DNA of 64,000 nt from Macrostomum lignano (taxonomy: Eukaryota): contig NIVC01000032.1 of NCBI GenBank assembly GCA_002269645.1, positions 1,364,001-1,428,000 of the forward strand, read 5' to 3'. How positions within the stretch are numbered: position 1 is the first letter of the stretch; every line of letters begins with the position of its first letter. Below, in pieces: positions 14,639-62,542 of the stretch. Made by a program: the position numbers and the translations under genes. Below the pieces are notes generated by a model. It was not told the DNA's origin. It did not search any database and was given only the letters and a program-made list of their open reading frames with translations.

Positions 14639-16879
14639 ATGACCGCCGGCAAGACAGCGATAGACATCTCGCTCGAGGCTCTGCCCGAAGTTGATGAACG
14701 CCAGAAACTACGGCCGCCGCCGAGGGACACACTTCGCCTGGTATACATCGCGTTTTTGCTTCACGGTGTGGGCATTCTGCTACCCTGGAATCTATTCATC
14801 AATGCCAAGGAGTACTTTGAGAACTACAAGCTCAACACGAACATCTCGCGCGAGGCGGACTACAGGCACAATTTTATGAACTACATCGGCCTCGGGTCTC
14901 AGCTGCCCAACATGCTCATGCTGGCTTGCAACGTCTTCTTTCAACCGTTGACGACCAGCGAAGGACAGGAAAAAACTGGCAGCAAAAATGCCGCACGTCG
15001 CATTATGCTGGTGATCCTGATCGAAGTTTGCGTCTGCGCCACCACCGCCATCATGGCCTTGGTGGACACGAGCGAATGCCCGCGATTGTTCTTCGATGTC
15101 ACGCTAATCAGTGTCATTGTGCTTAACTGTTGCACCGGCGTCTATCAGTCCTCAGCGTTCGGCATGGCGGGTGTGCTGCCCATGACCTACTCCAGTGCGA
15201 TCGTGCTGGGTAAGGCGTCTATCGTGATGCTTCTCGTGCGTGTCGTAGGAATCAGGGGCGTCGCCACCGGGGAGGGGGGGATGCCACAGTAAAAGCTGTG
15301 GGGGGGTTATGCCAATGCTTTGTCCCCCTCACCCAACCTTGTGATCCGTTATGAAAATCAATAATTTTGCTTCAGGGTGACAAAATATAGTGCCTGCGGC
15401 GCTAAAATGAGTGCCTGCAGCGCTAAAATGAGTGCCTGTGGCGCTAAAATGAGTGCCTGTGTCGCTAAAATGAGTGCCTGCGGCGCCAAAATGAGTGCCT
15501 GCGGCGCTAAAATGAGTGCCTGCGGCGCTAAAATAAGTGCCTGCGGCGCTAAAATGAGTGCCTGCGGCGCTAAAATGAGTGCCTGCCCAGACCTCATGGT
15601 GACAAGGGAGATATTAGTTTATTAGCTAGTCACAGAACAGCTTAACATAAGTGCGCTGTTACTACTAATCCAAATCTCCGAGTATCTCTCTGGAGCCGGC
15701 ACAGATATGGGGTGACGGAGGCCCACAAAATTTAGCAAACTTTTGCTCATCACTTTCCCAGCAAGCTTAAACATGCCACTTAAAATTCACTTGAAGCACT
15801 GAAGCATTTTAACGTCGTTTTACGCAACGCAGGTAACAACATCTGCGGAACAGTGGTTGCCATTGTGAACATTGTTAGTCGGCTGGCATCTTCGCAGAAT
15901 CTGCAAATGACCGCCGTTGGCTATTTCTCATTCTCTGTCGTACTGCTACTCATCTGCTTCTCCTCGCTCCTCATATTGCCGAAGCTGCCGTTCTATCGGC
16001 ACTACCAGCAGCCGCCGTCGCAACCGCATTCGTCTGAGAGGACCTGCGACACGACGCAAGGCGGCGCTAAGAACCGACTGCTCAATGAGCAGACGTCTTT
16101 CGAATCGGACGACTCAACTGAAACTGTAAACGGATGCTGCGATGAGAATCTGGAAACTTTCAGGGCTTGTTGTGCTTTGTGCTGTATCCGCAAGGGACCT
16201 GTGGCTGCGTGCTCCAGGTGAGCCAGCCGATTTTTTTAAAGAGTTGCCGATTTCCAAGTCAATTGAATTTTGGTAAAACAGCTGTGTCGTCAAAGTTGAA
16301 TTCATAACTTTGAACCACAATTTCAGATACTGGCAGCGATACCTGGCTGCCTTCAAAGAGTGCTGGGTTCACTGCCTCAGCGTCTGGTCGACATTCTTCT
16401 GCACGCTGGCCTGCTTTCCAGCCGTTCAATCGGCCATCCGTCCGGTCCAGCTGCTGTCCATAGAGGCCTGGTTCACCGACATCTTCGTGTTCCTCGGCTT
16501 CAACCTGTTCGCCATGCTGGGCAGTCTGGCGTCAAATTTTGTACAATTCCCAAAACCACGCTGGCTGGCACTGGCCGTGTGGATTCGAACCCTAATCTTC
16601 ATACCGTTCTTCATCATGTGCAACTGTTTCCCGGACAACCGGGCCCCGGCATTCCCGGTGGTCATCGCTAATGACTACGTGTTCGCGGCGGGCATGGTGT
16701 TGTTCGCTTTCACCGGCGGCTACTTCAGCGCCCTCTGCATGATGTACGCGCCAAGGGACGTGAAGAATCCAAAGCACGCGGCATTGGCTGGCATGGTGTC
16801 GTCATTCTTCCTGGTCTCCGGCATCTTCTGCGGAGTGGCCTTCGGTGGAGTGCTGTTCAATGTGGTGCAGGCGCATTAG
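14639..16879 (+). CDS. Equilibrative nucleoside transporter (SLC29/ENT family), intact copy, 3 exons, 502 aa
   Basis: Exons 14639-15209, 15833-16217, 16327-16879 (1509 nt). PPPRD..LVY..F.LHG.G.LLPWN.FI.A..YF, G.YQSS.FG, F..TLA.FPAV, FNLF..LGS and FAFTGGY.S.L.MMYAP motifs with multiple hydrophobic TM segments. Confidence 0.95.
15253..15590 (+). mobile_element. hAT-type MITE carrying a 21-bp minisatellite (ATGAGTGCCTGCGGCGCTAAA); right end deleted in this copy
   Basis: Left end GTAGGAAT|CAGGGGCGTCGC is identical to the complete copies at 32620-33474 and 50141-50978; right TIR and TSD are missing. Confidence 0.85.
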
Positions 16880-19596: not shown

Positions 19597-27030
<7,434 letters not shown>

Positions 27031-29715: not shown

Positions 29716-30004
29716 CATACATGCGCAACCTTCAAAAATCGGTCGGCCGTGTGACTTAGTTTTTATAAAAATGCGACGTAGTTTTTGGCCAAAAAATGCG
29801 ACTTACATATAAAAAAACCCAAGCAAAATTAACGCAACTTTGGGTAAACAACAGGAGTAACTGTCTTATTAAGCCAACATGTCTCGTCAGCTACTTAGTA
29901 CTACCACTTGAGTATCTGTTCGGGTGGGCATTTTTGCGACTTCTTTGTTTGGCTGCCAAATCGGTCGGCCGTCGGCCGACTCGGCCGACTGTTATGCATG
30001 TATG
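29716..30004. mobile_element. 289-bp hAT-type MITE in a RUN-gene intron; copy at 63227-63521, absent from unit 2
   Basis: TIRs CATACATGCGCAAC / GTTATGCATGTATG, 8-bp TSD GCTGCGGC (29708-15 and 30005-12). A single GCTGCGGC is present at the empty site ~46675. Confidence 0.9.
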
Positions 30005-31380: not shown

Positions 31381-32031
31381 AACTATAGAGAATTTTTCTA
31401 GTTAATAAGAAGGAATCATCTGGGAATTATTTAGCCCGTGGGAATGATGGAGAATGTATGTATGATCAGGGATACTGAAAGCAAGGTTCAGAGCCAGCTC
31501 AGAATAACAATTCTCACATGGAAGTCTTGCCCGATCAGGGAGAGCTTGCCGGGGCACAGACAAGCACCTGCTAGCAGCATGATCGTCGCAGCTTGAGCAG
31601 CGAACTTTCTGACGCCTCCTGCTGCGTCCGCGACTTGACCTGGGAGCAGCAGCAGCAGCAGCAGCCGGAGCATCTGCACTTAGAAGCAGAGACGGCGCCA
31701 ATTCCTCCGCTAGGTGGCCTTCTCCGCCTCGAACAGCGACTGCTTGCTGATTGCTGCTACTAGAGAAGTCAGGCAGATTGTGGAGACGCCAGCCGGCAAC
31801 TCTTTGGCGTAGAAATGCCCAGATCTGGCAAATTTGAACAGCTGACAGCCGATCGAAGTAGTTGGTTGGATTCCAGCTTTTGATCGCTACTATTATTATT
31901 ATCATTATGCCGAACTAATAACGATTGTGGATGTTGAAGAATTCTCAGATTTGAAGGCCGACGATCGGATTTCAGGCCGCGCCAAGTTGTACGCCTGGAG
32001 CAAGGCGGGGCGGCCTGTCTGGTCTGGCAAG

Positions 32032-34742
32032 GACATCTCGCTCGAGGCTCTGCCCGAAGTTGATGAACGCCAGAACTACGGCCGCCGCTGAAGGACACAC
32101 TTCGCCTGGTATACATCGCGTTTTTGCTTCACGGTGTGGGCATTCTGCTACCCTGGAATCTATTCATCAATGCCAAGGAGTACTTTGAGAACTACAAGCT
32201 CAACACGAACATCTCGCGCGAGGCGGACTACAGGCACAATTTTATGAACTACATCGGCCTCGGGTCTCAGCTGCCCAACATGCTCATGCTGGCTTGCAAC
32301 GTCTTCTTTCAGCCGTTGACGACCAGCGAAGGACAGGAAAAAACTGGCAGCAAAAATGCCGCACGTCGCATTATGCTGGTGATCCTGATCGAAGTTTGCG
32401 TCTGCGCCACCACCGTCATCATGGCCTTGGTGGACACGAGCGAATGCCGCGATTGTTCTTCGATGTCACGCTAATCAGTGTCATTGTGCTCAACTGTTGC
32501 ACCGGCGTCTATCAGTCCTCGGCGTTCGGCATGGCGGGTGTGCTGCCCATGACCTACTCCAGTGCGATCGTACTGGGTAAGGCGTCTATCGTGATGCTTC
32601 TCGTGCGTGTCGTAGGAATCAGGGGCGTCGCCACCGGGGGGGGGACATGTCACAGTAAAAGCTGTAGGGGGGTTATGCCAATGCTTTGTCCCCCTCACCC
32701 AACCTTGTGATCCGTTATGAAAATCAATAATTTTGCTTCAGGGTGACAAAATATAGTGCTGCAGCGCTTAAATGAGTGCCTGCGGCGCTAAAATGAGTGC
32801 CTGCGGCGCTAAATGAGTGCCTGCGGGCGCTAAAATGAGTGCCTGCGGCGCTAAAATGAGTGCCTGCGGCGCTAAAATGAGTGCCTGCGGCGCTAAAATG
32901 AGTGCCTGCGGCGCTAAAATGAGTGCCTACGGCGCTAAAATGAGTGCCTGCGGTGCTAAAATGAGTGCCTGCGGCGCTAAAATGAGTGCCCGCCGCGCAA
33001 AATGAGTGCCTGTGGCGCTAAAATGAGTGCCTGCAGCGCTAAAATGAGTGCCTGCGGCGCTAAAATGAGTGCCTGCGGCGCTAAAATGAGTGCCTGCGGC
33101 GCTAAAATGAGTGCCTGCGGCGCTAAAATGAGTGCCTGCGGCGCTAAAATGAGTGCCTGTGGCGCTAAAATGAGTGCCTGCGGCGCTAAAATGAGTGCCT
33201 GTGGCGCTAAAATGAGTGCCCGCCGCGCCAAAATGAGTGCCTGTGGCGCTAAAATGAGTGCCCGCCGCGCCAAAATGAGTGCCTACGGCGCTAAAATGAG
33301 TGCCTGTAGCTCTAAAACGAGTGCCTGTGGCGCTAAGATCAGTGCCTGAGGCGCTAAAACGAGTGCCTGCGGCGCCAAATGAGCGCTGACAACACCGATT
33401 CTGAAAATAATGTACATGTACATATAGAATTCTTGGCTCTGTCCCCCCAACCATAAAATCCATCGCGACCCCTGGTAGGAATCCCGCCCAGACCCCATGG
33501 TGACAAGGGAGATATTAGTTTATTAGCTAGTCACAGAACAGCTTTACATAAGTGCGCTGTTACTACTAATCCAAATCTCCGAGTATCTCTCTGGAGCCGG
33601 CACAGATATGGGGTGACGGAGGCCCACAAAATTTAGCAAACTTTTGCTCATCACTTTCCAGCAAGCTTAAACATGCCACTTAAAATTCACTTGAAGCACT
33701 GAAGCATTTTAACGTCGTTTTACGCAACGCAGGTAACAACATCTGCGGAACAGTGGTTGCCATTGTGAACATTGTTAGTCGGCTGGCATCTTCGCAGAAT
33801 CTGCAAATGACCGCCGTTGGCTATTTCTCATTCTCTGTCGTACTGCTACTCATCTGCTTCTCCTCGCTCCTCATATTGCCGAAGCTGCCGTTCTATCGGC
33901 ACTACCAGCAGCCGCCGTCGCAAACCATTCGTCTGAGAGGACCTGCGACAACTGAGCAGACGTCTTTCGAATCGGACGACTCAACTGAAACTTAAACGGA
34001 TGCTGCGATGAGAATCTGGAAACTGTCAGGGCTTGTTGTGCTTTGTGCTGTATCCGAAGGGACCTGTGGCTGCGTGCTCCAGGTGAGCCAGCCGATTTTT
34101 TTAAAGAGTTTCCGATTTCCAAGTCCATTGAATTTGGTAAAACAGCTGTGTCGTCAAAGTTGAATTCATAACTTTGAACCACAATTTCAGATACTGGCAG
34201 AGATACCTGGCTGCCTTCAAAGAGTGCTGGGTTCACTGCCTCAGCGTCTGGTCGACATTCTTCTGCACGTGGCCTGCTTTCCAGCCGTTCAATCGGCCAT
34301 CCGTCCGGTCCAGCTGCTGTCCATAGAGGCCTGGTTCACCGACATCTTCGTGTTCCTCGGCTTCAACCTGTTCGCCATGCTGGGCAGTCTGGCGTCAAAT
34401 TTTGTACAATTCCCAAAACCACGCTGGCTGGCACTGGCCGTGTGGATTCGAACCCTAATCTTCATACCGTTCTTCATCATGTGCAACTGTTTCCCGGACA
34501 ACCGGGCCCCGGCATTCCCGGTGGTCATCGCTAATGACTACGTGTTCACGGCTGGCATGGTGTTGTTCGCTTTCACCGGCGGCTACTTCAGCGCCCTCTG
34601 CATGATGTACGCGCCAAGGGACGTGAAGAATCCAAAGCACGCGGCATTGGCTGGCATGGTGTCGTCATTCTTCCTGGTCTCCGGCATCTTCTGCGGAGTG
34701 GCCTTCGGTGGAGTGCTGTTCAATGTGGTGCAGGCGCATTAG
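32032..34742 (+). pseudogene. ENT copy 2: 5'-truncated, with multiple frameshifts
   Basis: Lacks the ATG; 1-nt deletion at CCAGAACTAC; further small indels at ~32446, ~33925-33995, ~34055, ~34130 and ~34265 relative to copies 1/3. Confidence 0.88.
32620..33474 (+). mobile_element. hAT-type MITE with an internal 21-bp minisatellite (ENT intron 1, unit 2)
   Basis: TSD GTAGGAAT on both sides; CAGGGG...CCCCTG termini. Confidence 0.9.
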
Positions 34743-36891
34743 GCCGCTTAGAAAATTCCAAGTATATCAACTTATGGATGGAGCAAATAGTCAAGCTGCA
34801 TAAAGCTCGTCACTCTTAATGTCTCGATGTTAAAAAATCTTAAAAATATGTTACTTTTTCTAGAGCAGCTAGCTGACGTATTTCTATATTACAACTTCTA
34901 GTTCCATAAGCTCAGATATAACTTTGTTATAGTGCGTCATAATTTCCGGTGTTGCAGTCGTTGATTTCTGGCTAGAGACAGATTATAACAATTTAGTAAG
35001 ACCCCTTTAAATCAAATTGCTATTCGATTAGACGCTCCAGTACTTTCTGGTGACCCTATTTGTCATTGACGTTGGCTAATTTTATAGCTTCAATTTTTGG
35101 CCTCCATCTAGCTGGTTGAGTTTTGTCACGTCAACGAAGAAAACTTGTTTGCAGTTCAATTTTTGCGTATCTGTCACTCTTTTGGTGTATTTTTTGTTAA
35201 ATTAAACTATATTTAGGCTGTAAGCTATCGTGATGAAACTATAACTCAGTACTTCAATACAATTAGTAAATATGTAATATCATGCAATGTCAATTAATTT
35301 GAATATGGTGATTAATGCGCAACAGCTAGAATTCATTGCTGCATACTGAGAATTATAATACTTTACCAAATGTTTCTGCTGATTCTGGTTGCTGAATTTT
35401 GAAAGTCTGAGAGACCCTATAGATCAAACATTAGCTACTTAATAAGTAGTACGAGTATAAGCATGATTCAATTTTGATTGGTCAGTTGCGTTAAAATATA
35501 CTGATATTCCTCTATATGTGCTACTCATATTGTTGAAGTAAGTAAGTAAAGCGTTTTTTATTATTTAATGACTTTCAAATTCAAATTGATATGACAAATA
35601 TGCATTACCCCTGAGTTTACGTCCGCCAGCATTGCAAGTTAAGCCGAGTTGCTCCTGGTTAGTGCACACAGTTGAAGTTGCTATGCTTGTGTCCAGGGAG
35701 TCTTTCAGCGACCAGGTTTCGGCGTTCGACCACTGCCTCCTAGAACAAAGCCGCCCTCTGGCGGCTATAAGAATTTGACCCACAGGACCGCTTTTACAGC
35801 AGGAAACACGACGCCCATACAAGCTCTAATCAACATTGCGGACGTCAAGAACCAGACCGCCGAGGTAGACGAACTGCTGGTGCCATGAGAATCTCTCTCA
35901 CCCTAAAAATCTCTCTCACCTTGAGAATCTCTCGCCTGGAGAATCTGTCACCTAGAGAATCTCTTACCGGGAGAATCTGTCACCTGGAGAATCTCTCATC
36001 TTGATCATCTCTCGCCTGGAGAATATCTCACCTTGAGAATCTCTCACCTGGAAAATCTCTCACCTTGAGAATCTTTCCCTAAAGAGAATCTCTCACCTTG
36101 AGAATCGCTCACCTTGAGAATCTCTCAACTTGAGAATCTCTCACCTTGAGAACCTCTCACCATGATAATCTCTTGCCTGGAGAATCTGTCACCTGGAGAA
36201 CCTCTCATCTTGTTAATCTCTCGCCTGGAGAATATCTCGCCTGGAGAATCTCTTACCTGGAGAATCTCTCACCTGGAGAATCTCTCACCTGGAAAATCTC
36301 TCACCTGGAGAATCTCTCACCTGGAGAATCTCTCACCTGGGGAATCTCTCACCTTGAGAATGTCTCTCACCCTGATAATCTCTTGACTGGAGAATCTGTC
36401 ACCTGGAGAATCTCTTACCTGGAAAATTTCTTATCTTGATAATCTCTCGCCTGGAGATTCTCTCACCTAGAGAATCTCTCACCTGAAAAATCTCTCACCT
36501 GGAAAATCTCTCACCTGGAGAATCTCTCACCTGGGGAATCTGTAGAACCTGCCTTAAAATCCACCATTTTAACGAACTCGCAAGGCTTGTTATGAACAGC
36601 TAAACAGCAAAATTTAAAATTTAAAAAATTTTAATTTTTTAGATTCAATTAACAAAAGCCTATTCTGCGAGAAGAGAAATTATTACAAAGATGAAATTTC
36701 TTGTTTAACTAAGAGTTCGCAAAATTGTTTCAATGCCACATTCGACGCTAATTATCGAGCAACAGGTGTTTTCGAGTCACATGACCTTAATTATGTAATT
36801 CTGTTTTATTTAAATCGATAACCTCTGAAACGGCTAAAAGGTTTAAAATTATTTCATCCAGCTCGACACCTGCTGGCCGCCTGTTTCTACA

Positions 36892-42944
<6,053 letters not shown>

Positions 42945-43689
42945 TTGAAGATTTACATAATAAAATTAACTAACATTACAAAACAGTTTAAAATCTTAAC
43001 AATGTAATCAGTTGTCGGCAACCTTTTTACTTCAAGGGCCAAATATAAAAGTCTTGATGATTGCTGCGGGCCGGATGATAGATGACAGATTAGAGAGGTG
43101 AGAGAAAAGATTAGATAAAAGATAAGAGATGAGATGAGAGGAGAGAGCTGAGAAGAGACACAAACCTTGAGCGGGCTGGATTGCTATAGTGAAGTTTCAA
43201 AGGATCAAAGGAATTGTTTCAAAGGCCGGATAGAGAGGTGAAATACATATTTCACCCCTACACTTCTACGGTAAAATTACCCCTGCACTATTAATTTTAA
43301 CGGTTTTCCTTAATTAACGGTTTTAATTTTAACGACTTCTGCTATCCAATTCTACTGTATTATTACAGTTTTGCACTTAACTCATTAGTATCGCAAAAAC
43401 GAAAAATAAATCCGATAAAATCACTCACAAAAGTAGATAAACTTCGTTAACAGAAAATGTTCAAATTTTTTTCAAACAAAAACCTGAAGTAAATTATAAC
43501 AAAATAATAGAAATATGTCAATGGTTTGGAATGTTTAAAACAATCTTTGAGATAAAATCGGTCTGGAATTTATTGAAATCGGCATAAAAAACTGTGAGCT
43601 TGGAAATTATAGTGCTTATTAAATACTAGGCAGTATAATTATAGTTTGAAAGATATAAGAAGCGTAATACATGATAATATATACACCAC

Positions 43690-44544
43690 TTTTGGTTTTG
43701 TCTCGCATAGAGACGCCTAACCGCAGTCACTTCTGTGAAACTTGTCTCTGCCTGGCTGAAAGCTTGTAATGAGTGAGTAGGCTGGGTTGGAGGGTAATAG
43801 TGGATCGGGAGGGGCTGTGGGTAGCTGTATAGGAAGGCAGGCCTATACCTGTACCAAGGTGCTCTGACGGTATCCCTCAGGCGCCCTCTGAGCGTACAGC
43901 CAGCGACCCTATTAAAGCAGGAGTGTGCCAGAACCAGGACTGAGTCTGAGCAGGACGAGACCGTTGGCACGATCATAATAGAAATGGCGGGTTGGCGAAG
44001 CAAAGGGTGAAATAGTCCCGGCGATTAGCCCTCCTGCCGCTTCAAAGATAAGAGAGTGTCTGTTGGCAAGAGTACCCGGGGTTTAGTAGGGGGGGAGGCT
44101 CCTTCGGGTTGCCACGGCCGTGGGGGCGGTCTTATGACCGGTGTTTTGGCCTTTCTAACCCAGGAGAAGGCACGGGCTCCCCTGAATGGTTCTCTCTTCC
44201 CCCTCTAGCCTCGGGGAGGTTTATGATTTGTACCCGGGGGTGGTGGGCGGTCGGCCCCAGCATGGTAGCCACGGCTCTAGGCCTTCGGGCCACCCCTAAT
44301 AGGCATGGGTGTCTATCTAACCTGGTTTTTGGGCACGGGCTTCCTGACTGGTATGTCGTTCCGCTGTCACTGTCCCCCGGGGAGGTTTGGTTTTTTTGAT
44401 ACTGCCCTGTACAGTCCTCTATAGTCTAACTTGGCTTTTAGTGTACTTTAGTACACTCCCTAATAGGAAACTCATTTAGTCTAGTGGCGTAAGAGCCTAT
44501 TTCAATGGCTGAGGCGCCGGAGCACTTATCTTAGTTAGTTAGTT
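43690..44544 (+). mobile_element. 855-bp retroposon-like insertion unique to unit 2
   Basis: 13-bp direct repeat ATATATACACCAC on both sides (43677-89, 44545-57) with a single copy at the empty sites (~27758, ~61370). Ends in a short (TTAG)n tail; no TIRs. Confidence 0.8.
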
Positions 44545-45991
44545 ATATATACACCACGCAAAAAGTGAGTTAGATAAGCAGTGAAATAAATAAATAATTC
44601 CGGAAAAAATTACTAATTAACCTGCTAATTATTTCGGTTGAAAGGAGATTCAATGTGACAACAGCTTGCCGGTAAATAAGAAGATAGGGTAAGAGTAAAA
44701 CACGACAACAGATATGAGAATGTTTGCAACATATTTTAATTTGAAGGCACACGAAATAAAGGAAAAAGTAATCAAGTTTTTAATTATGAGCAACAATGCT
44801 CGATAAAAACCTGCTATGCTTGCACAATAGATTTGAGATTGCAAATAGAATTTCTGTATATATTATTACAGATAGTGCACCTGAATATTGCAAAAATAAA
44901 TTATTGAATTAATAAATTATTGCTCTAAAAACTGCAGTTTTTTTAAATAAGAAATTATTACAAGCAAAGATTTGAAGAAATGTTTAACTTGCTTAAAGCA
45001 GCAATTTTTGGTTTATTTTTTTGTTAAATTGGCTGAGCTCAAATTGCTCATCAATAAGTTTTTACCAATTTTGACTCTCTGATGTGCCAGCGGCCCAGGC
45101 TCGATTCCAAGTGCAGTCACATTAATTTGGGGCTAAATTGGAATCTCGGCTTGGCTCTGCTCATGCAATTAATGTCATTAAGAGCCAACCCCCCAAGGCG
45201 CAGTGAAGTGTACATGCCCAACGATTAATAAAGTTAAGGCCGCTGTACACTCCTGTGTGTGTGCCTGTGCGTATGACTGCGTACGTATCCGCGCGCTTGT
45301 GTGCCTGCTCAGGGGAGTCGGCGGAATGGGGGCAGCAATGCCTCTCGCCGGTTGTGCGACAATGTCGCTTAAAGTGCGCCCGAGTGCATACAGCTCCCTG
45401 CCTCTGATAAAAAATCTCTTCAGTGCATTTTTCAAGCGAATTGTCTATGGCCCAACCCCACTGAGCTGTAACTCAGTTTGAAACCGGCACTGCAGATAAA
45501 GTTGTTTTTTTACTTTAGTCATTGAATTGTCTATGGCCCAACCCCACTGAGCTGTCACTCAGTTTGAAACCGGCACTGCAGATAAAGTTTGTTTTTTTAC
45601 TTTAGTCATTGAATTGTCTTTGGCCCAACCCCACTGAGCTGTCACTCAGTTTGAAACCGGCACTGCAGATAAAGTTTGTTTTTTTACTTTAGTCATTGAA
45701 TTGTCTATGGCCCAACCCCACTGAGCTGTAACTCAGTTTGAAACCGGCACTGCAGATAAAGTTGTTTTTTTACTTTAGTCATTGAATTGTCTATGGCCCA
45801 ACCCCACTGAGCTGTCACTCAGTTTGAAACCGGCACTGCAGATAAAGTTTGTTTTTTTACTTTAGTCATTGAATTGTCTATGGCCCAACCCCACTGAGCT
45901 GTAACTCAGTTTGAAACCGGCACTGCAGATAAAGTTGTTTTTTTACTTTAGTCATTGAATTGTCTATGGCCCAACCCCACTGAGCTGTCAC

Positions 45992-48900
45992 TCAGTTTGA
46001 CCCCAGCGAGGCGGCAGATTTTGGCCTCGGCAGCCGACTGGCAGAAGTCGATCGAAATTTTCTAGCAACAGCACCGGAGCTTTGCCGCTGCTCAGTTTGA
46101 GACGCCGGCATAGGCCAGTAGTTGCGGCGCCGATTGGCATGTTGCCGATGTTGCTGCTTTTGCATCAGCTGGAGCCGGTCAAGAAGACTGCATAGGCGAG
46201 CTAACGAATTCAAACTGGCTGGTGTGCCCTGTCTCAGCAGGGCTAGCGGGCGATAGTTACGCTTGAGTAGGTCGGTGTTTGAGCACAGGTGCTTTAGCCA
46301 GGCTGACAAGAAACCGGCACTGCAGATAAAGTTTGCTTTTTTACTTTAGTCATTAAATTTGAGCACAAATGCTAGGAAAGCAAATTCCATTAATCTCTTA
46401 ACCATGCAATCTAATCAAAACACTTATTGACAATCCACTAGGGTTGTAGCCTCCTCAAGACTCACGACTGAAAGGTTAGGGGTTCGATTCCCGATCCCAC
46501 TGGAACAATTTGTGTCCTTGAGAGCAAGACACTCAACTCTGCATTGCTTGAGTTCACCCAGCTGTAAAATGGGTGCCAGCATTAGCTGGGGTAATTGAGG
46601 GTGTGTGGCGACCCCCCCTCCCAGTCCTCGGACTGCACAGCCGTACGCAGCCTTCAGACTGCGCCGCGCAAATAGCTGCGGCTGAGCTGTCGGTTGCACA
46701 TCTGCCTATTATGACAGGTGTAATCTATTAACTATCAAATCACTCACTTCAAACAGGCAACGACAAAGGCATCGAATCGGCCCTGTTCGCCATTTGATTC
46801 GCTTTTCGAAGCATTTATTTGACGCACAATGGCCGACAGCTTTAGACCAATCGGTACTGCGGAAATTTGGAAATGTTAAATCAATAGATTGAGACGCAAA
46901 GCAATCGAACCCCCCTCGTTCGTGGGTTCTGAGACTCACCGCAACTTGCACAAGACTCTTCAACCAGCAGACACAGCGGCGAAGCCATCAGTCTGCTTTT
47001 CTTTAACAGCAGACTTCTCTGTTGAACAGTTCTAGCCTTGCTAACATTGCCGCCAAATTGGTTGACAAATTCGGCTGTGGACCAAGCGCTGGACATTGCT
47101 AAACCGTTGCTAACTAAACTGTACAATGAGCGGCACAGTAAACCTACAATAACAGATGAAGATTGACCGTTGCTAGGCAAACTGCAGATCGATATCAGCT
47201 GTTCGACAGCAGACGCGGCTTGAGCAGACAATCGATTGAGTTGGCGAGTAGGCGATTCGGGAACTGGAAGGCGAGACGGTGCAGCAGTTTGAGCCGGTTT
47301 GCTGGACACAGGCGAGCCGCAAAATTCCAACGGCGGGCTGTCCTCGTCGTCGCCATAGAGACCAACTGACTGGGGTATTACCTGGTCTCGGGAAATATTG
47401 TTGAGCACGGGGGAGTTTGAGCACGGATTGATTGGTTAATTAGTCTTCAGGATGTCAAGTTAGTCTATAGGAAGCTATATCTATCTTTGGGATTTTTCAG
47501 TTAGCCAGTAGGAAATACGGGGAATTTTGTTAGAATTAGTCAGTGGGAATCATGGGGAATTTTTTAGAATTAGTTAGTGGGAATCATGGGGAATGTTTTT
47601 AGAATTAGTCAGTGGGAATCATAGGGAATTTTTTAGAATTAGTTAGTGGGAATCATGGGAAAATTTTTTTAGAATTAGTCAAAGGGAATCATAGGGAATT
47701 TTTTAGAATTAGTTAGTGGGAATCATGGGAAAATTTTTTTAGAATTATTCAAAGGGAATCATGGGGAATTTATTAGAATTGGTCGAAGGGAATCATGGGG
47801 AATTTTTGAGAATTAGTCAGTGAGAATCATGGGAATTTTGTTTAAATTAGTCAGTGGGAATCATGGGGAATTTTTTAGAATTAGTCAGTGGGAATCATGA
47901 GGAACTTTTTTAGAATTAGTCAATGGGAATCATGGGGAATTTTTTAGAATTAGTCAGTGGGAATCATGAGGAACTTTTTTAGAATTAGTCAGTGGGAATC
48001 ATGGGGAATTTTTTAGAATTAGTCAGTGGGAATCATGAGGGACTTTTTAAAAATAGTCAGTGGGAATTCATGGGAACTTTTTTAGAACTAGCCAACGGGA
48101 ATCATGGGGAACTTTTTTAGAACTAGCCAACGGGAATCATGGGGAACTTTTTTAGAACTAGCCAATGGGAATCATGGGGAACTTTTTTAGAACTAGCCAA
48201 CGGGAATCATGGGGAACTTTTTTAGAAATAGCCAATGGGAATCATGGGGAACTTTTTTAGAACTAGTCAACGGGAATCATGGGGAACTTTTTTAGAATTA
48301 GTCAACGGGAATCATGGGGAACTTTTTTAGAATTAGTCAGTGGGAATCATGGGGAACTTTTTTAGAATTAGTCAGTGGGAATCATGGGTAACTTTTTTAG
48401 AACTAGTCAACGGGAATCATGGGGAACTTTTTTAGAATTAGTCAGTGGGAATCATGGGGAACTTTTTTAGAATTAGTCAGTGGGAATCATGGGGAACTTT
48501 TTTAGAATTAGTCAGTGGGAATCATGGGGAACTTTTTTAGAACTAGCCAACGGGAATCATGGGGAACTTTTTTAGAATTAGTCAGTGGGAATCATGGGGA
48601 ACTTTTTTAGAATTAGTCAGTGGGAATCATGGGGAACTTTTTTAGAACTAGTCAACGGAAATCATGGGGAACTTTTTTAGAATTAGTCAGTGGGAATCAG
48701 GGGGAACTTTTTTTAAAATTAGCCAATGGGAATCATGGGGGACTTTTTTAGAATTAGTCAGAGAGAATCAGGGGGAATTTTTGAGAATTAGTCAGTGGGA
48801 AATTGGAATCATGGGGAACTTTTTTAGAATTAGTCAATGGGAATCATGGGGAATGTTTTTATAATTAGTCAGTGGGAATCATGGGGAATTTTAATCAGTG

Positions 48901-49636
48901 GGAACTATAGAGAATTTTTCTAGTTAATAAGAAGGAATCATCTGGGAATTATTTAGCCCGTGGGAATGATGGAGAATGTATGTATGATCAGGGATACCGA
49001 AAGCAAGTTTCAGAGCCAGCTCAGAATAACAATTCTCACATGGAAGTCTTGCCCGATCAGGGAGAGCTTGGCCGGTGGCACAGACAAGCACCTGCTAGCA
49101 GCATGATCGTCGCAGCTTGAGCAGCGAACTTTCTGACGCCTCCTGCTGCGTCCGCGACTTGACCTGGGAGCAGCAGCAGCAGCAGCAGCCGGAGCATCTG
49201 CACTAGAAGCAGAGACGGCGCCAATTCCTCCGCTAGGTGGCCTTCTCCGCCTCGAACAGCGACTGCTTGGATTGCTGCTACTAGAGAAGTCAGGCAGATT
49301 GGTGGAGACGCCAGCCGGCAACTCTTGGCGTAGAAATGCCAGATCTGGCAAATTTGAACAGCTGACAGCCGATCGAAGTAGTTGGTTGGATTCCAGCTTT
49401 TGATCGCTACTATTATTATTATCATTATGCCGAACTAATAACGATTGTGGATGTTGAAGAATTCTCAGATTTGAAGGCCGACGATCGGATTTCAGGCCGC
49501 GCCAAGTTGTACGCCTGGAGCAAGGCGGGGCGGCCTGTCTGGTCTGGCAAGGACATCTCGCTCGAGGCTCTGCCCGAAGTTGATGAACGCCAGAACTACG
49601 GCCGCCGCTGAAGGACACACTTCGCCTGGTATACAT
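45992..49636 (-). CDS. Predicted chimeric ORF: ENT-antisense-derived N-terminus fused to the RUN-domain gene (491 aa)
   Basis: Exons 49636-49040, 47381-46940, 46856-46748, 46319-45992 (1476 nt), GT-AG and stop-free. The first ~28 codons come from the reverse strand of ENT exon 1. Expression is unknown. Confidence 0.5.
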
Positions 49637-52251
49637 CGCGTTTTTGCTTCACGGTGTGGGCATTCTGCTACCCTGGAATCTATTCATCAATGCCAAGGAG
49701 TACTTTGAGAACTACAAGCTCAACACGAACATCTCGCGCGAGGCGGACTACAGGCACAATTTTATGAACTACATCGGCCTCGGGTCTCAGCTGCCCAACA
49801 TGCTCATGCTGGCTTGCAACGTCTTCTTTCAGCCGTTGACGACCAGCGAAGGACAGGAAAAAACTGGCAGCAAAAATGCCGCACGTCGCATTATGCTGGT
49901 GATCCTGATCGAAGTTTGCGTCTGCGCCACCACCGTCATCATGGCCTTGGTGGACACGAGCGAATGCCCGCGATTGTTCTTCGATGTCACGCTAATCAGT
50001 GTCATTGTGCTCAACTGTTGCACCGGCGTCTATCAGTCCTCGGCGTTCGGCATGGCGGGTGTGCTGCCCATGACCTACTCCAGTGCGATCGTACTGGGTA
50101 AGGCGTCTATCGTGATGCTTCTCGTGCGTGTCGTAGGAATCAGGGGCGTCGCCACCGGGGGGGGGACATGTCACAGTAAAAGCTGTAGGGGGGTTATGCC
50201 AATGCTTTGTCCCCCTCACCCAACCTTGTGATCCGTTATGAAAATCAATAATTTTGCTTCAGGGTGACAAAATATAGTGCCTGCAGCGCTTAAATGAGTG
50301 CCTGCGGCGCTAAAATGAGTGCCTGCGGCGCTAAAATGAGTGCCTGCGGCGCTAAAATGAGTGCCTGCGGCGCTAAAATGAGTGCCTGCGGCGCTAAAAT
50401 GAGTGCCTGCGGCGCTAAAATGAGTGCCTACGGCGCTAAAATGAGTGCCTGCGGTGCTAAAATGAGTGCCTGCGGCGCTAAAATGAGTGCCCGCCGCGCC
50501 AAAATGAGTGCCTGTGGCGCTAAAATGAGTGCCTGCAGCGCTAAAATGAGTGCCTGCGGCGCTAAAATGAGTGCCTGCGGCGCTAAAATGAGTGCCTGCG
50601 GCGCTAAAATGAGTGCCTGCGGCGCTAAAATGAGTGCCTGCGGCGCTAAAATGAGTGCCTGTGGCGCTAAAATGAGTGCCTGCGGCGCTAAAATGAGTGC
50701 CTGTGGCGCTAAAATGAGTGCCCGCCGCGCCAAAATGAGTGCCTGTGGCGCTAAAATGAGTGCCCGCCGCGCCAAAATGAGTGCCTACGGCGCTAAAATG
50801 AGTGCCTGTAGCTCTAAAACGAGTGCCTGTGGCGCTAAGATCAGTGCCTGAGGCGCTAAAACGAGTGCCTGCGGCGCCAAATGAGCGCTGACAACACCGA
50901 TTCTGAAAATAATGTACATGTACATATAGAATTCTTGGCTCTGTCCCCCCAACCATAAAATCCATCGCGACACCCCTGGTAGGAATCCCGCCCAGACCCC
51001 ATGGTGACAAGGGAGATATTAGTTTATTAGCTAGTCACAGAACAGCTTTACATAAGTGCGCTGTTACTACTAATCCAAATCTCCGAGTATCTCTCTGGAG
51101 CCGGCACAGATATGGGGTGACGGAGGCCCACAAAATTTAGCAAACTTTTGCTCATCACTTTCCCAGCAAGCTTAAACATGCCACTTAAAATTCACTTGAA
51201 GCACTGAAGCATTTTAACGTCGTTTTACGCAACGCAGGTAACAACATCTGCGGAACAGTGGTTGCCATTGTGAACATTGTTAGTCGGCTGGCATCTTCGC
51301 AGAATCTGCAAATGACCGCCGTTGGCTATTTCTCATTCTCTGTCGTACTGCTACTCATCTGCTTCTCCTCGCTCCTCATATTGCCGAAGCTGCCGTTCTA
51401 TCGGCACTACCAGCAGCCGCCGTCGCAACCGCATTCGTCTGAGAGGACCTGCGACACTGAGCAGACGTCTTTCGAATCGGACGACTCAACTGAAACTGTA
51501 AACGGATGCTGCGATGAGAATCTGGAAACTGTCAGGGCTTGTTGTGCTTTGTGCTGTATCCGCAAGGGACCTGTGGCTGCGTGCTCCAGGTGAGCCAGCC
51601 GATTTTTTTAAAGAGTTTCCGATTTCCAAGTCCATTGAATTTTGGTAAAACAGCTGTGTCGTCAAAGTTGAATTCATAACTTTGAACCACAATTTCAGAT
51701 ACTGGCAGAGATACCTGGCTGCCTTCAAAGAGTGCTGGGTTCACTGCCTCAGCGTCTGGTCGACATTCTTCTGCACGCTGGCCTGCTTTCCAGCCGTTCA
51801 ATCGGCCATCCGTCCGGTCCAGCTGCTGTCCATAGAGGCCTGGTTCACCGACATCTTCGTGTTCCTCGGCTTCAACCTGTTCGCCATGCTGGGCAGTCTG
51901 GCGTCAAATTTTGTACAATTCCCAAAACCACGCTGGCTGGCACTGGCCGTGTGGATTCGAACCCTAATCTTCATACCGTTCTTCATCATGTGCAACTGTT
52001 TCCCGGACAACCGGGCCCCGGCATTCCCGGTGGTCATCGCTAATGACTACGTGTTCACGGCTGGCATGGTGTTGTTCGCTTTCACCGGCGGCTACTTCAG
52101 CGCCCTCTGCATGATGTACGCGCCAAGGGACGTGAAGAATCCAAAGCACGCGGCATTGGCTGGCATGGTGTCGTCATTCTTCCTGGTCTCCGGCATCTTC
52201 TGCGGAGTGGCCTTCGGTGGAGTGCTGTTCAATGTGGTGCAGGCGCATTAG
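49552..52251 (+). pseudogene. ENT copy 3: 5'-truncated but otherwise open frame
   Basis: Exons ..-50097, 51238-51589, 51699-52251 are open. No native ATG; in-frame TGA upstream after the 1-nt deletion; first in-frame ATG at 49764 (after TM1). 33-nt in-frame deletion in the central loop. Confidence 0.75.
50141..50978 (+). mobile_element. Complete 838-bp hAT-type MITE with an internal 21-bp minisatellite
   Basis: TIRs CAGGGGCGTCGC / GCGACACCCCTG; 8-bp TSD GTAGGAAT at 50133-40 and 50979-86. Confidence 0.92.
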
Positions 52252-54910: not shown

Positions 54911-57900
54911 GTAAAAGACAGACAGAGTCACAAGCACCAGAGGTCGCTGACCATCGCAGCCCCAATCGACCCCCCAGCGACCGGCTAATCGTGTTCGTCC
55001 CCACGCGGCAGGCGCAGCTGGACTGGCTGGAACTGATCCACTCCCAGGCTGGGAAGCCTGGCGAAGTCGGCGAAAATGTACGTTGGATCAACGTAATATG
55101 TTTTAATTAAGATATCTTTTCAGCGAGAGAGGACTGAGATTCTAAGGCGAGATGCTCGATGATTCTCATAAGATTCTAACACAAGGGATAATTATGCTAG
55201 AGATTCTCAAGGGGAACGATACTCTATAGGTGAGATGTTTTCAAGGTGAGATATTCTCCAGGTGAAGGATTCTCAAGGTGAGAGATTCTCAAGGTGAGAG
55301 ATTCTCAAGGTGAGAGATTCTCAAGGTGAGATATTCTCAAGGTGAGATATTCTCAAGGTGCGATATTCTCAAGGTGAGATATTCTCACGATGAGAGATTC
55401 TCAAGGTGAGAGATTCTCAAGGTGAGATATTCTCACGATGAGAGATTCACAAGGTGAGAGATTCTCAAGGTGAATGATTCTCAAGGTGAGAGATTCTCAA
55501 GGTGAGATATTCTTACGATGAGAGATTCTCAAGGTGAGAGTTTCTCAAGGTGAGAGATTCTCAAAGTGAGATATTCTCAAGGTGAGAGATTCTCCAGGTG
55601 AGATATTCTCAAGGTGAGAGATTCTCAAGGTGAGATATTCACAAGGTGAGGGATTCTCCAGGTGAGAGATTCTCAAGAAGAGATATTCTCAAGGTGAGAT
55701 ATTCTCAAGGTGAGGGATTCTCCAGGTGAGAGATTCAAACAAATAATATCGTCGCTTCTGCCCCGTCCTTCATCGCAGGTGAGATTCTGGTTCGGTCCGG
55801 GGCTGCTGAACCAAGAGACCATAGTCTTTGTTCCAGGCGGTGACTATGGCAGACTGGTGTCGGCCATACCCAGCAGTCAGGACACGTACTCTTGGTGGAC
55901 GGTGCAGAAAGAAAATCTTGGCAAACTGGTTACCAGGGAGACGAGAGCAAACGCTGTTCGAAGGAGGAGTTCGGATATCAGCTCCGCGTATCGCACCTAT
56001 CAGGAGGTGAGGTCTTTGTATTAGAGTTACAAAGTGTGACATCCGTGTCCAACAAAGTGGGAAATCCCTGTCTAACAAAGTGTGACTTCCGTGTCTAACA
56101 AAGTGTGACATCCGTGTCCAACAAAGTGGGAAATCCCTGTCTAACAAAGTGTGACATCCGTGTCTAACAAAGTGTGACATCCGTGTCTAACAAAGTGTGA
56201 CATCCATGTCTAACAGAGTGGGACATTCGTGTCTAACAGAGTGTGACATCCATGTCTAACAGAGTGGGACATTCGTGTCTAACAGAGTGTGACATCCATG
56301 TCTAACAGAGTGGGACATTCGTGTCTAACAGAGTGTGACATCCGTGTCTAACAGGGTGTGACATCCGTGTCTAACAGAGTGTGACATCCGTTTCTAACAG
56401 AGTGTGACATCCGTTTCTAACAGGGTGTGACATCCGCGTCTAACCGAGTGTGAGATGGACCGTCTCAAACCTGATAAATTAAATCGATCTCATGTTCCGC
56501 CTACAGATCCTGAACTTCCTAGACCAGACACAATCAACTTGCGGCTCATTCTGTTCCGTTGAAAAATTTGGCACCAGCTACGAAGGCAGAGACTTAAAAT
56601 TAATTAAGGTAAATAAAAATAATCACTGATCGAATATTAATGTACTAGACAAAGCATAAGTAGTATGAAGCGTAGAAAATCATCATTTTTTATCAGATTG
56701 GCGATGATCTGCCATCGAAGCGAATTATTTGGATTGACGCCGGCATTCACGCAAGAGAATGGATTGCTCCAGCCACTGCTCTGTACTTCATCGATAAGGT
56801 AAACTCTACCATCACTGCTCATGTCTACTCTACCCTTAGTCTACCATCACTGCTCATGTCTACTCCACCCTTAGTCTACCATCACTGCTCATGTCTACTC
56901 CACCCTTAGTCTACCATCACTGCTCATGTCTACTCTACCCTTAGTCTACCATCACTGCTCATGCCTACTCTACCATCACTGCTCATGTCTACTCTACCAT
57001 CACTGCTAATGTCTACTCTACCCTTAGTCTACCATCACTGCTCATGTCTCATCACTGCTCATGTCTACTCTACCATCACTGCTCATGTCTACTCTACCCT
57101 TAGTCTACCATCACTGCTCACGTCTACTCTACCCTTAGTCTACCATCACTGCTCACGTCTACTCTACCCTTAGTCTACCATCACTGCTCACGTCTACTCT
57201 ACCCTTAGTGTATAACCATCAGTGCTCATGTCTCACAACAATTGCAGATAGTCCAAGGCTACAAGTCGTCAGATTCAACTATAAAGTCGATGCTGGATAA
57301 CTTTGCCTTCTATATCGCTCCTCTGCTAAATCCGGATGGATATGTGTACACTTTTACTACGGTAAGTACGGTCTGGTGGCGGGTTGAATATTGGAAAAAG
57401 TAGTATCGTTTTGGTTCTGAGACTGGGTAGAGGTTAAATATTAGCTTGTTCTCAGTGAATGATGATGATACACTATGATACAAGCATGATGATCGTCAGT
57501 TCTCCTCGGCCAACACCCAGCGCTGACGGAAATTCTTAGGGGCGTCACCGTGGACTTTATGGTGGGGGGACAAAGCCAAGAATTCAACATGTACTGAAGT
57601 ACATGTACATGACTAAACTCGATCCTAAATTTCCATTATTGTGAGAATCGTGTTATCAGCGCTCATTTTAGCGCCGCAGGCACTCATTTGGCGCCACAGG
57701 CACTCATTTTAGCGCCGTAGGCACTCATTTTAGCGCCGTAGGCTCTCATTTTAGCGCCGTAGGCACTCATTTTAGCGCCGCAGGCACTCATTTTAGCGCC
57801 GTAGGCACTCATTTTAGCGCCGTAGGCACTCATTTTAGCGCCGTAGGCACTCATTTTAGCGCCGTAGGCACTCATTTTAGCGCCGTAGGCACTCATTTTA

Positions 57901-60638: not shown

Positions 60639-62542
60639 TTGAAGATTTACATAATAAAATTAACTAACATTACAAAACAGTTTAAAATCTTAACAATGTA
60701 ATCAGTTGTCGGCAACCTTTTTACTTCAAGGGCCAAATATAAAAGTCTTGATGATTGCTGCGGGCCGGATGATAGATGACAGATTAGAGAGGTGAGAGAA
60801 AAGATTAGATAAAAGATAAGAGATGAGATGAGAGGAGAGAGCTGAGAAGAGACACAAACCTTGAGCGGGCTGGATTGCTATAGTGAAGTTTCAAAGGATC
60901 AAAGGAATTGTTTCAAAGGCCGGATAGAGAGGTGAAATACATATTTCACCCCTACACTTCTACGGTAAAATTACCCCTGCACTATTAATTTTAACGGTTT
61001 TCCTTAATTAACGGTTTTAATTTTAACGACTTCTGCTATCCAATTCTACTGTATTATTACAGTTTTGCACTTAACTCATTACTATCGCAAAAACGAAAAA
61101 TAAATCCGATAAAATCACTCACAAAAGTAGATAAACTTCGTTAACAGAAAATGTTCAATTTTTTTTCAAACAAAATCTGAAGTAAATTATAACAAAATAA
61201 TAGAAATATGTCAATGGTTTGGAATGTTTAAAACAATCTTTGAGATAAAATCGGTCTGGAATTTATTGAAACCGGCATAAAAAACTGTGAGCTTGGAAAT
61301 TATAGTGCTTATTAAATACTAGACAGTATAATTATAGTTTGAAAGATATAAGAAGCATAATACATGATAATATATACACCACGCAAAAAGTGAGTAAGAT
61401 AAGCACTGAAAGATGCAGGTTAGCATAATTGCGCATCATATTTTAACAGTAAAACGAGTGAAATAAATAAATAATTCCGGAAAAAATTACTAATTAACCT
61501 GCTAACTATTTCGGCTGAAAGGAGATTCAATGTGACAAATATGAGAATATTTGCAACATATTTTAATTTGAAGGCACACACAATAAAGGAAAAAGTAATC
61601 AAGTTTTGAATTATGAGCAACAATGCTCGATAAAAACCTGCTATGCTTGCACAATAGATTGAGATTGCAAATAGAATTTCTGTATAAATTATTACAGATA
61701 GTGCACCTGAATATTGCAAAAATAAATTATTGAACAGGGCTCTAAAACTGCAGTTTTTTCTAAATACGAAATTATTACAAGCAAAAATTTGAAGAAATGT
61801 TTAACTTGCTTAAAGCTGCAATTTTTGGTTTATTTTTTTGTTAAATTGGCTGAGCTCAAATTGCTCATCAATAAGTTTTTAACAATTTTGACTCTCTGAT
61901 GTGCCAGCGGCCCAGGCTCGATTCCAAGTGCAGTCACATTAATTTGGGGCTAAATTGGAATCTCGGCTTGGCTCTGCTCGTGCAATTAATGTCATTAAGA
62001 GCCAACCCCCCAAGGCACAGTGAAGTGTACATGCCCAACGATTAATAAAGTTAAGGCCGCTGTACACTCCTGTGTGTGTGCCTGTGCGTATGACTGCGTA
62101 CGTATCCGCGCGCTAGTGTGCCTGCTCAGGGGAGTCGGCGGAATGGGGGCAGCAATGCCTCTCGCCGGTTGTGCGACAATGTCGCTTAAAGTGCGCCGAG
62201 TGCATACAGCTCCATGCCTCTAATAAAAAATCTCTTCAGTGCATTTTTCAAGCGAATTGTCTATGGCCCAACCCCACTAAGCTGTCACTCAGTTTGAAAC
62301 CGGCACTGCAGATAATTTTTTTTACTTTAGTCATTGAATTGTCTTTGGCCCAACCCCACTGAGCTGTCACTCAGTTTGAAACCGGCACTGCAGATAAAGT
62401 TTGTTTTTTTTTTAGTCATTGAATTGTCTATGGCCCAACCCCACTGAGCTGTCACTCAGTTTGAAACCGGCACTGCAGATAAAGTTTGTTTTTTTACTTT
62501 AGTCATTGAATTGTCTTTGGCCCAACCCCACTGAGCTGTCAC

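What the first reader, a model, noticed from the sequence alone, without database searches (positions are those of the whole stretch)
45992..49636. Duplication junction creates an open 491-aa chimeric gene from antisense ENT sequence plus a RUN-domain gene
Seen: the junction at 49552 joins a truncated RUN-gene exon (-) head-to-head with ENT exon 1 (+). An ATG on the ENT antisense strand (49636) reads ~28 codons, crosses the junction and stays open to a GT donor at 49040, then through three phase-compatible RUN exons. Seen: the 1-nt deletion CCAGAAACTAC>CCAGAACTAC shared by ENT copies 2/3 breaks the ENT frame and is exactly what puts this ATG in frame; the copy-1 sequence would be out of frame. 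Inference: a newly born chimeric gene, possibly also an antisense transcript to ENT. Chance is possible, and the frame of the first exon depends on my splice-site choice.
Basis: partly seen in the sequence, partly recalled or inferred. Interest (0 to 1): 0.8.

Follow-up and report, generated by a model that had tools for sequence, protein, structure and literature searches.

The report
Duplication-junction ORF, probably not a gene
In a flatworm (Macrostomum lignano) genome, a 17-kb tandem duplication joins the beheaded copies of two genes head-to-head; the 491-codon reading frame across the join exists, but it is about what chance predicts and nothing shows it is expressed.

Summary
The sequence facts hold. 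The window is Macrostomum lignano DNA with a ~17.4-kb unit repeated three times in tandem. The unit starts 24 nt into the coding sequence of a nucleoside-transporter (ENT) gene and ends inside a coding exon of a RUN-domain gene on the other strand. The join has a 3-bp microhomology and occurs twice (32032, 49552). From ATG 49636 (minus strand) a spliced 491-codon frame is open. Residues 29-491 match residues 102-564 of the transcript-annotated native protein PAA70571.1 at 462 of 463 positions, so frame and splice sites are correct. The shared 1-nt deletion does put the ATG in frame.

The "new gene" reading is weakly supported:
- 94% of the frame is inherited from a near-identical parent.
- The 28-codon leader is what 22-28% of arbitrary junctions would give.
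- Both fragments lack their 5' ends and face away from each other, so no promoter arrives.
- Short upstream reading frames precede the ATG.
- The same frame at the other junction is closed, possibly by assembly error.
- No database protein has the chimeric N-terminus.

Most likely this is a by-product of a young segmental duplication. Transcription could not be tested.

The parts
49552..49554 (.). Duplication junction J2. It is a 3-bp microhomology (GAC on the plus strand, GTC on the minus strand) shared by ENT codon 9 and the RUN exon.
49555..49636 (-). Leader of the chimeric ORF, read from the antisense strand of truncated ENT exon 1. ATG at 49636-49634; about 28 codons, MYTRRSVSFSGGRSSGVHQLRAEPRARC.
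49594..49595 (.). Site of the 1-nt deletion (AAA in copy 1 at about 14705-14707; AA in copies 2 and 3). It puts ATG 49636 in the RUN frame and separates the ENT frame from everything upstream.
49040..49551 (-). Native part of RUN exon A (5'-truncated), corresponding to P0001 residues about 102-273. Donor GT at 49039-49038.
47501..48892 (.). 35-bp satellite (about 40 copies) filling the intron between exon A and exon 2.
46940..47381 (-). RUN exon 2. An alternative in-frame acceptor 12 nt downstream, at 47369, is used by other gene models.
46748..46856 (-). RUN exon 3.
45992..46319 (-). RUN exon 4 with stop codon TGA at 45994-45992. The RUN domain (PF02759) spans chimera residues 281-429, across exons 2-4.
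32032..32034 (.). Twin junction J1, with the same sequence as J2.
31769..32116 (-). Same ATG (32116) and leader at J1. The ORF closes after 115 codons because exon A here carries 6-7 small indels.
14639..16879 (+). Intact ENT gene (copy 1), PF01733. ATG at 14639. The duplication breakpoint at 14663 lies after codon 8.
49552..52251 (+). ENT copy 3. It is 5'-truncated: no ATG, and two stop codons lie just upstream of the conserved frame. Its exons are otherwise open.
32032..49551 (.). Second copy of the ~17.4-kb tandem unit: ENT(+), carboxypeptidase M14(+), RUN(-). Copy 1 is 14663-32031; copy 3 runs from 49552 past the window end.

Best explanation
The feature is the breakpoint scar of a young tandem segmental duplication (now three units of ~17.4 kb) in the Macrostomum lignano genome.

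How it formed. An illegitimate, microhomology-mediated join (3 bp) connected a point 24 nt into the ENT coding sequence with a point inside a coding exon of the convergently oriented RUN-domain gene. Each internal junction therefore carries a 5'-truncated RUN fragment and a 5'-truncated ENT fragment that point away from each other. Neither has its promoter or its start codon. The carboxypeptidase M14 gene between them is duplicated whole.

Why the frame is open. The 491-codon frame is the still-undecayed 3' part of the RUN gene (463 codons). It happens to be preceded, after a 1-nt deletion in the ENT remnant, by an in-frame ATG 28 codons upstream on the ENT antisense strand.

What is shown and what is inferred. 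Shown: the duplication, the junction, the frames and the chance level. Inferred: that the frame is an untranscribed or non-functional by-product, that is, a duplicated gene fragment or incipient pseudogene, rather than a gene.
For: - Three tandem units with identical junction sequences at 32032 and 49552.
- A 3-bp microhomology, with the intact exon continuing upstream in Mlig_3_7 locus L001.
- Chimera residues 29-491 equal native residues 102-564 with one difference.
- The fragment differs from the intact L001 coding sequence by only 10 substitutions in 1,391 nt. Only 2 substitutions are private to this copy (both synonymous), so openness says nothing about selection.
- An ATG-led open leader is expected at 22-28% of arbitrary junctions.
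- The truncated ENT copies have no start codon.
- The twin junction ORF is closed after 115 codons, and RUN exon 4 of that unit is frameshifted.
- In-frame upstream ATGs at 49687 and 49663 are closed by a TGA only 10 nt before the main ATG, so they act as short upstream ORFs.
- No protein with the chimeric N-terminus was found among the homologues or cluster members. The exact 491-aa and 208-aa products are not on record.
- In the best-studied data set of tandem-duplication-born genes, new transcripts arise when a 5' gene segment is placed next to other sequence (PMC5460883). That is the opposite of the geometry here.
Against: - No expression data could be consulted, so absence of transcription is an inference.
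- M. lignano trans-splices 30-39% of its genes. Its spliced leader ends in ATG and needs only an unpaired acceptor (PMC5730564, PMC8629364). A promoter-less fragment is therefore easier to rescue there than in most animals. A [T/C]TNCAG acceptor-like motif ends 37 nt upstream of the ATG.
- The frameshifts that close the twin ORF look like long-read consensus errors: 6-7 indels against 2 substitutions, both beside an indel. Copies 2 and 3 show 3 substitutions against about 8 one-nt indels in 5.3 kb. The twin may therefore really be open.
- The two private substitutions of this copy are both synonymous, although this has no statistical power.
Confidence: 0.72

Rival explanations
1. A real, newly born chimeric gene. 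Minus-strand transcription starts inside the ENT remnant, either from a cryptic promoter, from divergent transcription off the downstream M14 promoter, or by spliced-leader trans-splicing of an antisense read-through. It produces an mRNA encoding an N-terminally replaced RUN-domain protein, with 28 new residues in place of at least 101 native ones. It may also act as an antisense RNA to the ENT remnant.
For: - The spliced ORF is intact with native splice sites, a complete RUN domain and the native 3' end.
- The deletion brings an ATG into frame.
- An acceptor-like TTCCAG ends 37 nt upstream of the ATG.
- Trans-splicing is widespread in this species.
- The two copy-private coding changes are synonymous.
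Against: - Neither parent donates a promoter.
- The ATG is at chance level.
- Short upstream ORFs sit directly before the ATG.
- No database protein has this N-terminus.
- The only gene model that links antisense ENT to RUN (UniProt A0A1I8I309) skips exon A, starts in translated satellite and reads past the native stop. That pattern fits an ab initio artefact better than a transcript.
- The acceptor motif is expected by chance about once per 500 nt.
Confidence: 0.12
2. The fine detail is an assembly product. The illegitimate junction is real, but the copy number (three units), the mosaic make-up of the units, or the single-base frame state (the AAA-to-AA deletion, the open state at J2, the closed state at J1) reflect consensus errors or redundant assembly of a noisy long-read draft.
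For: - Copies 2 and 3 differ by 3 substitutions but about 8 one-nt indels in 5.3 kb of unique sequence, and 7 of those are deletions in copy 2.
- Exon A at J1 differs from J2 by 6-7 indels and only 2 substitutions, both beside an indel; several of the indels are single bases added to short runs of the same base.
- The units are mosaics: in the left half copies 2 and 3 agree, in the right half copies 1 and 3 agree.
- The window is not identical to either Mlig_3_7 locus (96-98% identity with many gaps).
- The window exactly encodes UniProt-only fragment models, so it may come from the older PacBio assembly ML2. That assembly is 1040 Mb for a 742-Mb genome and only 32% error-free by REAPR (PMC5730564).
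Against: - The junction sequence and the deletion are identical in two copies whose other indels are not shared.
- The deletion comes with two shared substitutions.
- A gene model from a different contig (P0002, with the K303 variant absent from the window) also places antisense ENT upstream of RUN exon 2.
- AAA in copy 1 is confirmed by the intact ENT frame.
Confidence: 0.16

Closest known systems
Chimeric and 'recruited non-coding' gene structures at tandem-duplication breakpoints in Drosophila yakuba (Rogers et al. 2017, PMC5460883; 2014, PMC4069613)
   Same: A tandem duplication whose breakpoints fall inside two genes creates a novel junction. There a fragment of one gene is read together with sequence that was not coding in that frame.
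   Different: In the Drosophila cases the productive configurations carry a 5' segment (promoter and transcription start, with or without the start codon) into the junction, and expression was measured. Here both fragments are 3' parts facing outward, no promoter is supplied, and expression is unknown.
Sdic gene cluster of Drosophila melanogaster (from my own knowledge, not checked here)
   Same: A tandemly repeated chimeric unit born from a duplication that fused parts of two neighbouring genes (AnnX and Cdic). It has a new 5' coding end derived from sequence that was not coding in that way before.
   Different: Sdic has a demonstrated testis promoter, transcripts and a phenotype. The present ORF has none of these, and its new leader comes from the antisense strand of the partner gene.
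Duplicated (unprocessed) pseudogene or gene fragment
   Same: It retains introns, lacks the parental promoter, 5' exons and start codon, and lies next to the parent in a segmental duplication. The sister fragment carries frameshifts.
   Different: The J2 copy has no disabling mutation downstream of the breakpoint and has acquired an in-frame ATG.
RUN-domain proteins (Pfam PF02759); weakest-but-best solved relatives are the RUSC2/Iporin and RUSC1 RUN domains
   Same: The RUN domain is detected at residues 281-429 (E = 9e-12, above the gathering score). There are weak hits to 6if2 and 4giw.
   Different: No SH3 domain or other partner domain was detected. The orthology group was not determined.

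Membership tests
Chimeric gene born at a tandem-duplication junction | The junction joins parts of two parental genes | tested here: met
   ENT exon 1 (breakpoint 24 nt after the ATG) is joined to a RUN coding exon. There is a 3-bp microhomology and the junction is present twice.
Chimeric gene born at a tandem-duplication junction | A continuous ORF crosses the junction into the native frame of the recipient gene | tested here: met
   491 codons at J2. Residues 29-491 equal P0001 residues 102-564. At J1 the frame closes after 115 codons, possibly through consensus error.
Chimeric gene born at a tandem-duplication junction | A promoter or 5' end is inherited from one parent, or a new one is demonstrated | tested here: not met
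   Both fragments are 5'-truncated and diverge from the junction. No promoter tool for this organism was available to test for a new one.
Chimeric gene born at a tandem-duplication junction | A transcript crosses the junction | not testable with these tools
   No RNA-seq was accessible. The exact products are absent from the protein collection. The homologue search found no protein with the chimeric N-terminus.
Chimeric gene born at a tandem-duplication junction | Evidence of selection on the new copy | tested here: inconclusive
   There are only 2 substitutions private to the copy, both synonymous. The site patterns among copies are reticulate.
Duplicated pseudogene or gene fragment | Lacks the parental start codon, 5' exons and promoter, and retains introns | tested here: met
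   Homology to the intact gene ends at L001:10764. The upstream 763 nt of the L001 gene, including the native N-terminus, is absent from the window.
Duplicated pseudogene or gene fragment | Disabling mutations in the retained coding part | tested here: inconclusive
   None at J2. Several indels at J1 in exon A and exon 4, but the indel-to-substitution ratio suggests assembly error.
RUN domain family (PF02759) | Match to the Pfam HMM above the gathering score | tested here: met
   45.6 bits against a cut-off of 22, at residues 281-429.
Equilibrative nucleoside transporter (PF01733) | Match to the Pfam HMM above the gathering score (partner gene, copy 1) | tested here: met
   209.7 bits against a cut-off of 29.8.

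The most novel reading that the evidence does not exclude
The junction ORF is a transcribed, translated young gene. A tandem duplication plus one single-base deletion converted the antisense strand of a transporter exon into a new 28-residue N-terminus for a RUN-domain protein. Expression of the promoter-less fragment is made possible by spliced-leader trans-splicing or by divergent or cryptic transcription. This would be a route to gene birth that is particularly open in trans-splicing animals.
Probability: 0.1. Interest if true: 0.55.

Novelty: new member of a known kind. Interest (0 to 1): 0.22.

Why it matters
If it were expressed, this would be a dated, mechanistically transparent example of gene birth. 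The sequence of events would be a microhomology-mediated tandem duplication, then a 1-nt deletion, then antisense-derived coding sequence. It would also be in an animal where trans-splicing could relax the need for a promoter at the breakpoint.

As it stands it mainly matters for annotation. It explains several odd UniProt models of M. lignano: 288-aa RUN fragments, and the 739-aa A0A1I8I309 that runs antisense through ENT. It also shows that single-base frame arguments in this draft assembly need read-level confirmation.

Tried and rejected
- I tried to reach the ENT gene or the junction in the polished Mlig_3_7 assembly. Homologue searches with ENT exon 1 and with carboxypeptidase M14 exons returned no M. 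lignano protein.
- P0002 and P0003 are not on record as gene products.
- I reconstructed the 435-aa M14 product of L001 by exon-chain search. The first attempt timed out. Later attempts gave many equally valid chains. L001 stops about 3 kb short of where the junction would be.
- Look-ups of the 491-aa product and of the unspliced 208-aa ORF found nothing.
- A literature search for the locus name Mlig005653 found no paper. The Wasik 2015 genome paper is not held.
- A Rfam scan of the whole window and ARAGORN on the SINE-like intron fragment were negative.
- A dN/dS-type argument was rejected. There are only 2 lineage-private substitutions, and the site patterns indicate gene conversion.
- The explanation 'one clean unequal crossover' for the third copy was rejected. 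It predicts that the middle unit is a hybrid whose right half matches copy 1, and the observed mosaic does not show that.
Full report
**What the window is.** The 491-aa conceptual product finds a 564-aa RUN-domain protein of the flatworm Macrostomum lignano (P0001 = PAA70571.1, BOX15_Mlig005653g2) at 97% identity. The window is therefore M. lignano genomic DNA. A self-comparison shows a ~17.4-kb unit repeated three times head-to-tail: 14663-32031, 32032-49551, and 49552 to beyond 64000. On the plus strand each unit holds an equilibrative nucleoside transporter gene (ENT, PF01733, 209.7 bits) and an M14 carboxypeptidase whose tested exons are open in all three copies. On the minus strand it holds the 3' part of the RUN-domain gene (PF02759).

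**Checking the observation.**
- The left end of the unit lies 24 nt after the ENT start codon. ATG is at 14639, the breakpoint is at 14663, and codons 1-8 are lost.
- The right end lies inside a RUN coding exon. In the Mlig_3_7 assembly (locus L001, contig NIVC01001226.1) that exon continues upstream in the same frame, and homology to the window stops at L001:10764, which corresponds to 49554 and 32034.
- ENT homology starts at 49552, so 3 bp (GAC on the plus strand, GTC on the minus strand) are shared. That is a microhomology junction with no inserted bases.
- On the minus strand the ATG at 49636 opens a frame that crosses the junction, runs to the GT donor at 49039, and continues through 47381-46940, 46856-46748 and 46319-45992.
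- Residues 29-491 align without gaps to residues 102-564 of P0001 with one difference, E303K. P0001 comes from the transcript-guided annotation of Mlig_3_7 (PMC5730564).
- In-frame indels between the two Mlig_3_7 paralogues (P0001 and P0004) also indicate that this low-complexity frame is coding.
- The 1-nt deletion (AAA to AA) is shared by copies 2 and 3 together with two nearby substitutions. With the copy-1 sequence the RUN frame would be open for 45 codons upstream but would contain no ATG.

All the stated sequence facts are confirmed.

The same junction, with the same ATG (32116) and the same deletion, sits one unit to the left. There the frame closes after 115 codons because exon A carries 6-7 small indels. 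RUN exon 4 of that unit is also frameshifted.

**Is it more than chance?** No, for three reasons.
- 463 of the 491 codons are the inherited 3' part of a gene. This copy differs from the intact L001 coding sequence by 10 substitutions in 1,391 nt. Only 2 substitutions are private to this copy when the paralogue L002 is used as outgroup. An undecayed frame is therefore the neutral expectation.
- For the leader I asked how often an arbitrary junction position and frame is preceded by an in-frame ATG with no stop in between. The answer is 21.5% over the whole window and 28% within antisense ENT exons.
- All ten ATGs in the 400 nt upstream on this strand fall in this same frame, probably a by-product of ENT codon usage. 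The two nearest (49687, 49663) are closed by a TGA 10 nt before the main ATG. Any mRNA starting more than about 30 nt upstream would therefore carry short upstream ORFs.

**Geometry.** ENT (+) lies at the left end of the unit and RUN (-) at the right end. At each internal junction the two fragments are therefore both 5'-truncated and point away from each other. Neither brings a promoter, a transcription start or a start codon.
- The ENT remnants have two stop codons immediately upstream of the conserved frame, and no ATG before the first transmembrane segment.
- In the Drosophila yakuba survey of tandem duplications, new or chimeric transcripts arise when a 5' gene segment is placed next to other sequence (PMC5460883). 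The present configuration is the unproductive one.
- Transcription would need a cryptic or divergent promoter inside the ENT/M14 copy to the right.

There is one organism-specific caveat. M. lignano trans-splices 30-39% of its genes to a 35-nt leader that ends in ATG. An unpaired acceptor ([T/C]TNCAG) is sufficient for this. One such motif ends 37 nt upstream of the ATG, but the motif is expected about once per 500 nt by chance.

**Database evidence on expression.**
- Only three protein clusters are related to the query, and I read all of their members. They are the intact proteins (564, 618, 550 and 468 aa), 288-aa fragments that begin at exon 2, and the 739-aa UniProt model A0A1I8I309.
- A0A1I8I309 starts in translated 21-bp satellite, runs through antisense ENT ORFs, skips exon A, joins RUN exons 2-4 and reads past the native stop. 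That pattern fits an ab initio artefact better than a transcript. It does carry the K303 variant that no window copy has, so a second contig also places antisense ENT upstream of RUN exon 2.
- No protein has the chimeric N-terminus. The exact 491-aa and unspliced 208-aa products are not on record.

This is only weak negative evidence.

**Quality of the underlying sequence.**
- Copies 2 and 3 differ in 5.3 kb of unique sequence by 3 substitutions but about 8 one-nt indels. Seven of these are deletions in copy 2, clustered in ENT exons.
- Exon A at the first junction differs from the second by 6-7 indels and only 2 substitutions, both beside an indel. Such ratios are typical of long-read consensus error rather than evolution.
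- The window is 96-98% identical, with many gaps, to Mlig_3_7 locus L001 and about 90% identical to the paralogous L002. It exactly encodes UniProt-only fragment models. It may therefore come from the older PacBio assembly ML2, which was reported to be inflated and error-rich (PMC5730564). That origin is an inference.

Two consequences follow. First, the closed state of the twin ORF is not reliable evidence of decay. Second, any single-base frame argument needs read support. The deletion itself is probably real, because it is identical in two copies whose other indels are not shared, and it is accompanied by shared substitutions.

**History.**
- In the left half of the unit, copies 2 and 3 are virtually identical and differ from copy 1 at 122 of about 5,490 sites (2.2%).
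- In the right half, copies 1 and 3 agree and copy 2 is the odd one out at 69 of about 3,000 sites.
- The RUN coding sites show reticulate patterns among the three copies and L001.
- The first duplication is thus young, at roughly a quarter of the L001-L002 paralogue divergence.
- The array was then remodelled by unequal exchange or gene conversion, or the assembly is chimeric. A single unequal crossover does not reproduce the pattern.

**Verdict.** The 'newly born chimeric gene' is an open frame that neutral processes would be expected to produce, in the geometry least likely to be transcribed. I put about 0.7 on an unexpressed or non-functional by-product and about 0.1 on a truly expressed new gene. 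The remainder goes to the possibility that the frame or copy-number detail is an assembly product. Stranded RNA reads across 49552 or 32032, and genomic reads over 49594, would settle it.

Noticed in passing
window 14663-64000 (three units): The tandem units are mosaics. In the left half (ENT to the 5' half of M14) copies 2 and 3 are identical at 122 sites where copy 1 differs. In the right half (3' half of M14 to RUN) copies 1 and 3 agree at 69 sites where copy 2 differs. RUN coding variants are reticulate among the copies and the Mlig_3_7 allele. This indicates gene conversion or unequal exchange, or a chimeric assembly.
   Followed up: partly
window 45438-46000 (also 28653-29043, 62254-62551; L001 13473-14465): An 87-bp tandem repeat lies directly 3' of the RUN stop codon. 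Its unit is the exon-4 splice acceptor (tttatctgcag|tgccggttt) fused to the stop-codon region, so the body of exon 4 sits inside one unit of the array. Copy number varies: 6.5, about 4.5 and about 3.4 in the window, and about 11 in L001.
   Followed up: partly
window 47501-48892 vs 30870-31370: A 35-bp satellite in the RUN intron has about 40 copies in unit 2 but only about 0.5 kb in unit 1, so the satellite turns over quickly within a young duplication.
   Followed up: no
window 50276-50885 (+) and 57659-58052 (inverted); equivalents in the other units: A 21-bp satellite in an ENT intron recurs in inverted orientation about 7 kb away in the M14 gene. UniProt A0A1I8I309 translates it as GAKMSAY repeats. 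That 739-aa entry looks like an artefactual model running antisense through ENT into RUN exons 2-4.
   Followed up: partly
window 32446-34269 vs 49967-51778: Copy 2 of ENT carries seven 1-nt deletions relative to copy 3, with only one substitution over the same 2.4 kb. This is probably long-read consensus error, so frameshift-based pseudogene calls in this window are unsafe.
   Followed up: yes
window 49637-50036, minus strand: All ten ATG triplets in the 400 nt upstream of ATG 49636 are in the same reading frame as it. This is probably a by-product of NNC-ATN (Ile-rich) codon pairs on the ENT sense strand.
   Followed up: no
window about 46440-46660 (RUN intron 3), all three units: A SINE-like fragment with a tRNA T-arm-like GGTTCGATTCCCGATCC on the plus strand. 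ARAGORN and Rfam find nothing there.
   Followed up: partly
window 46643-46740 vs 29687-30106 and 63198-63623: RUN intron 3 of unit 2 is about 325 bp shorter than in units 1 and 3. This is a further private change in the right half of unit 2.
   Followed up: no
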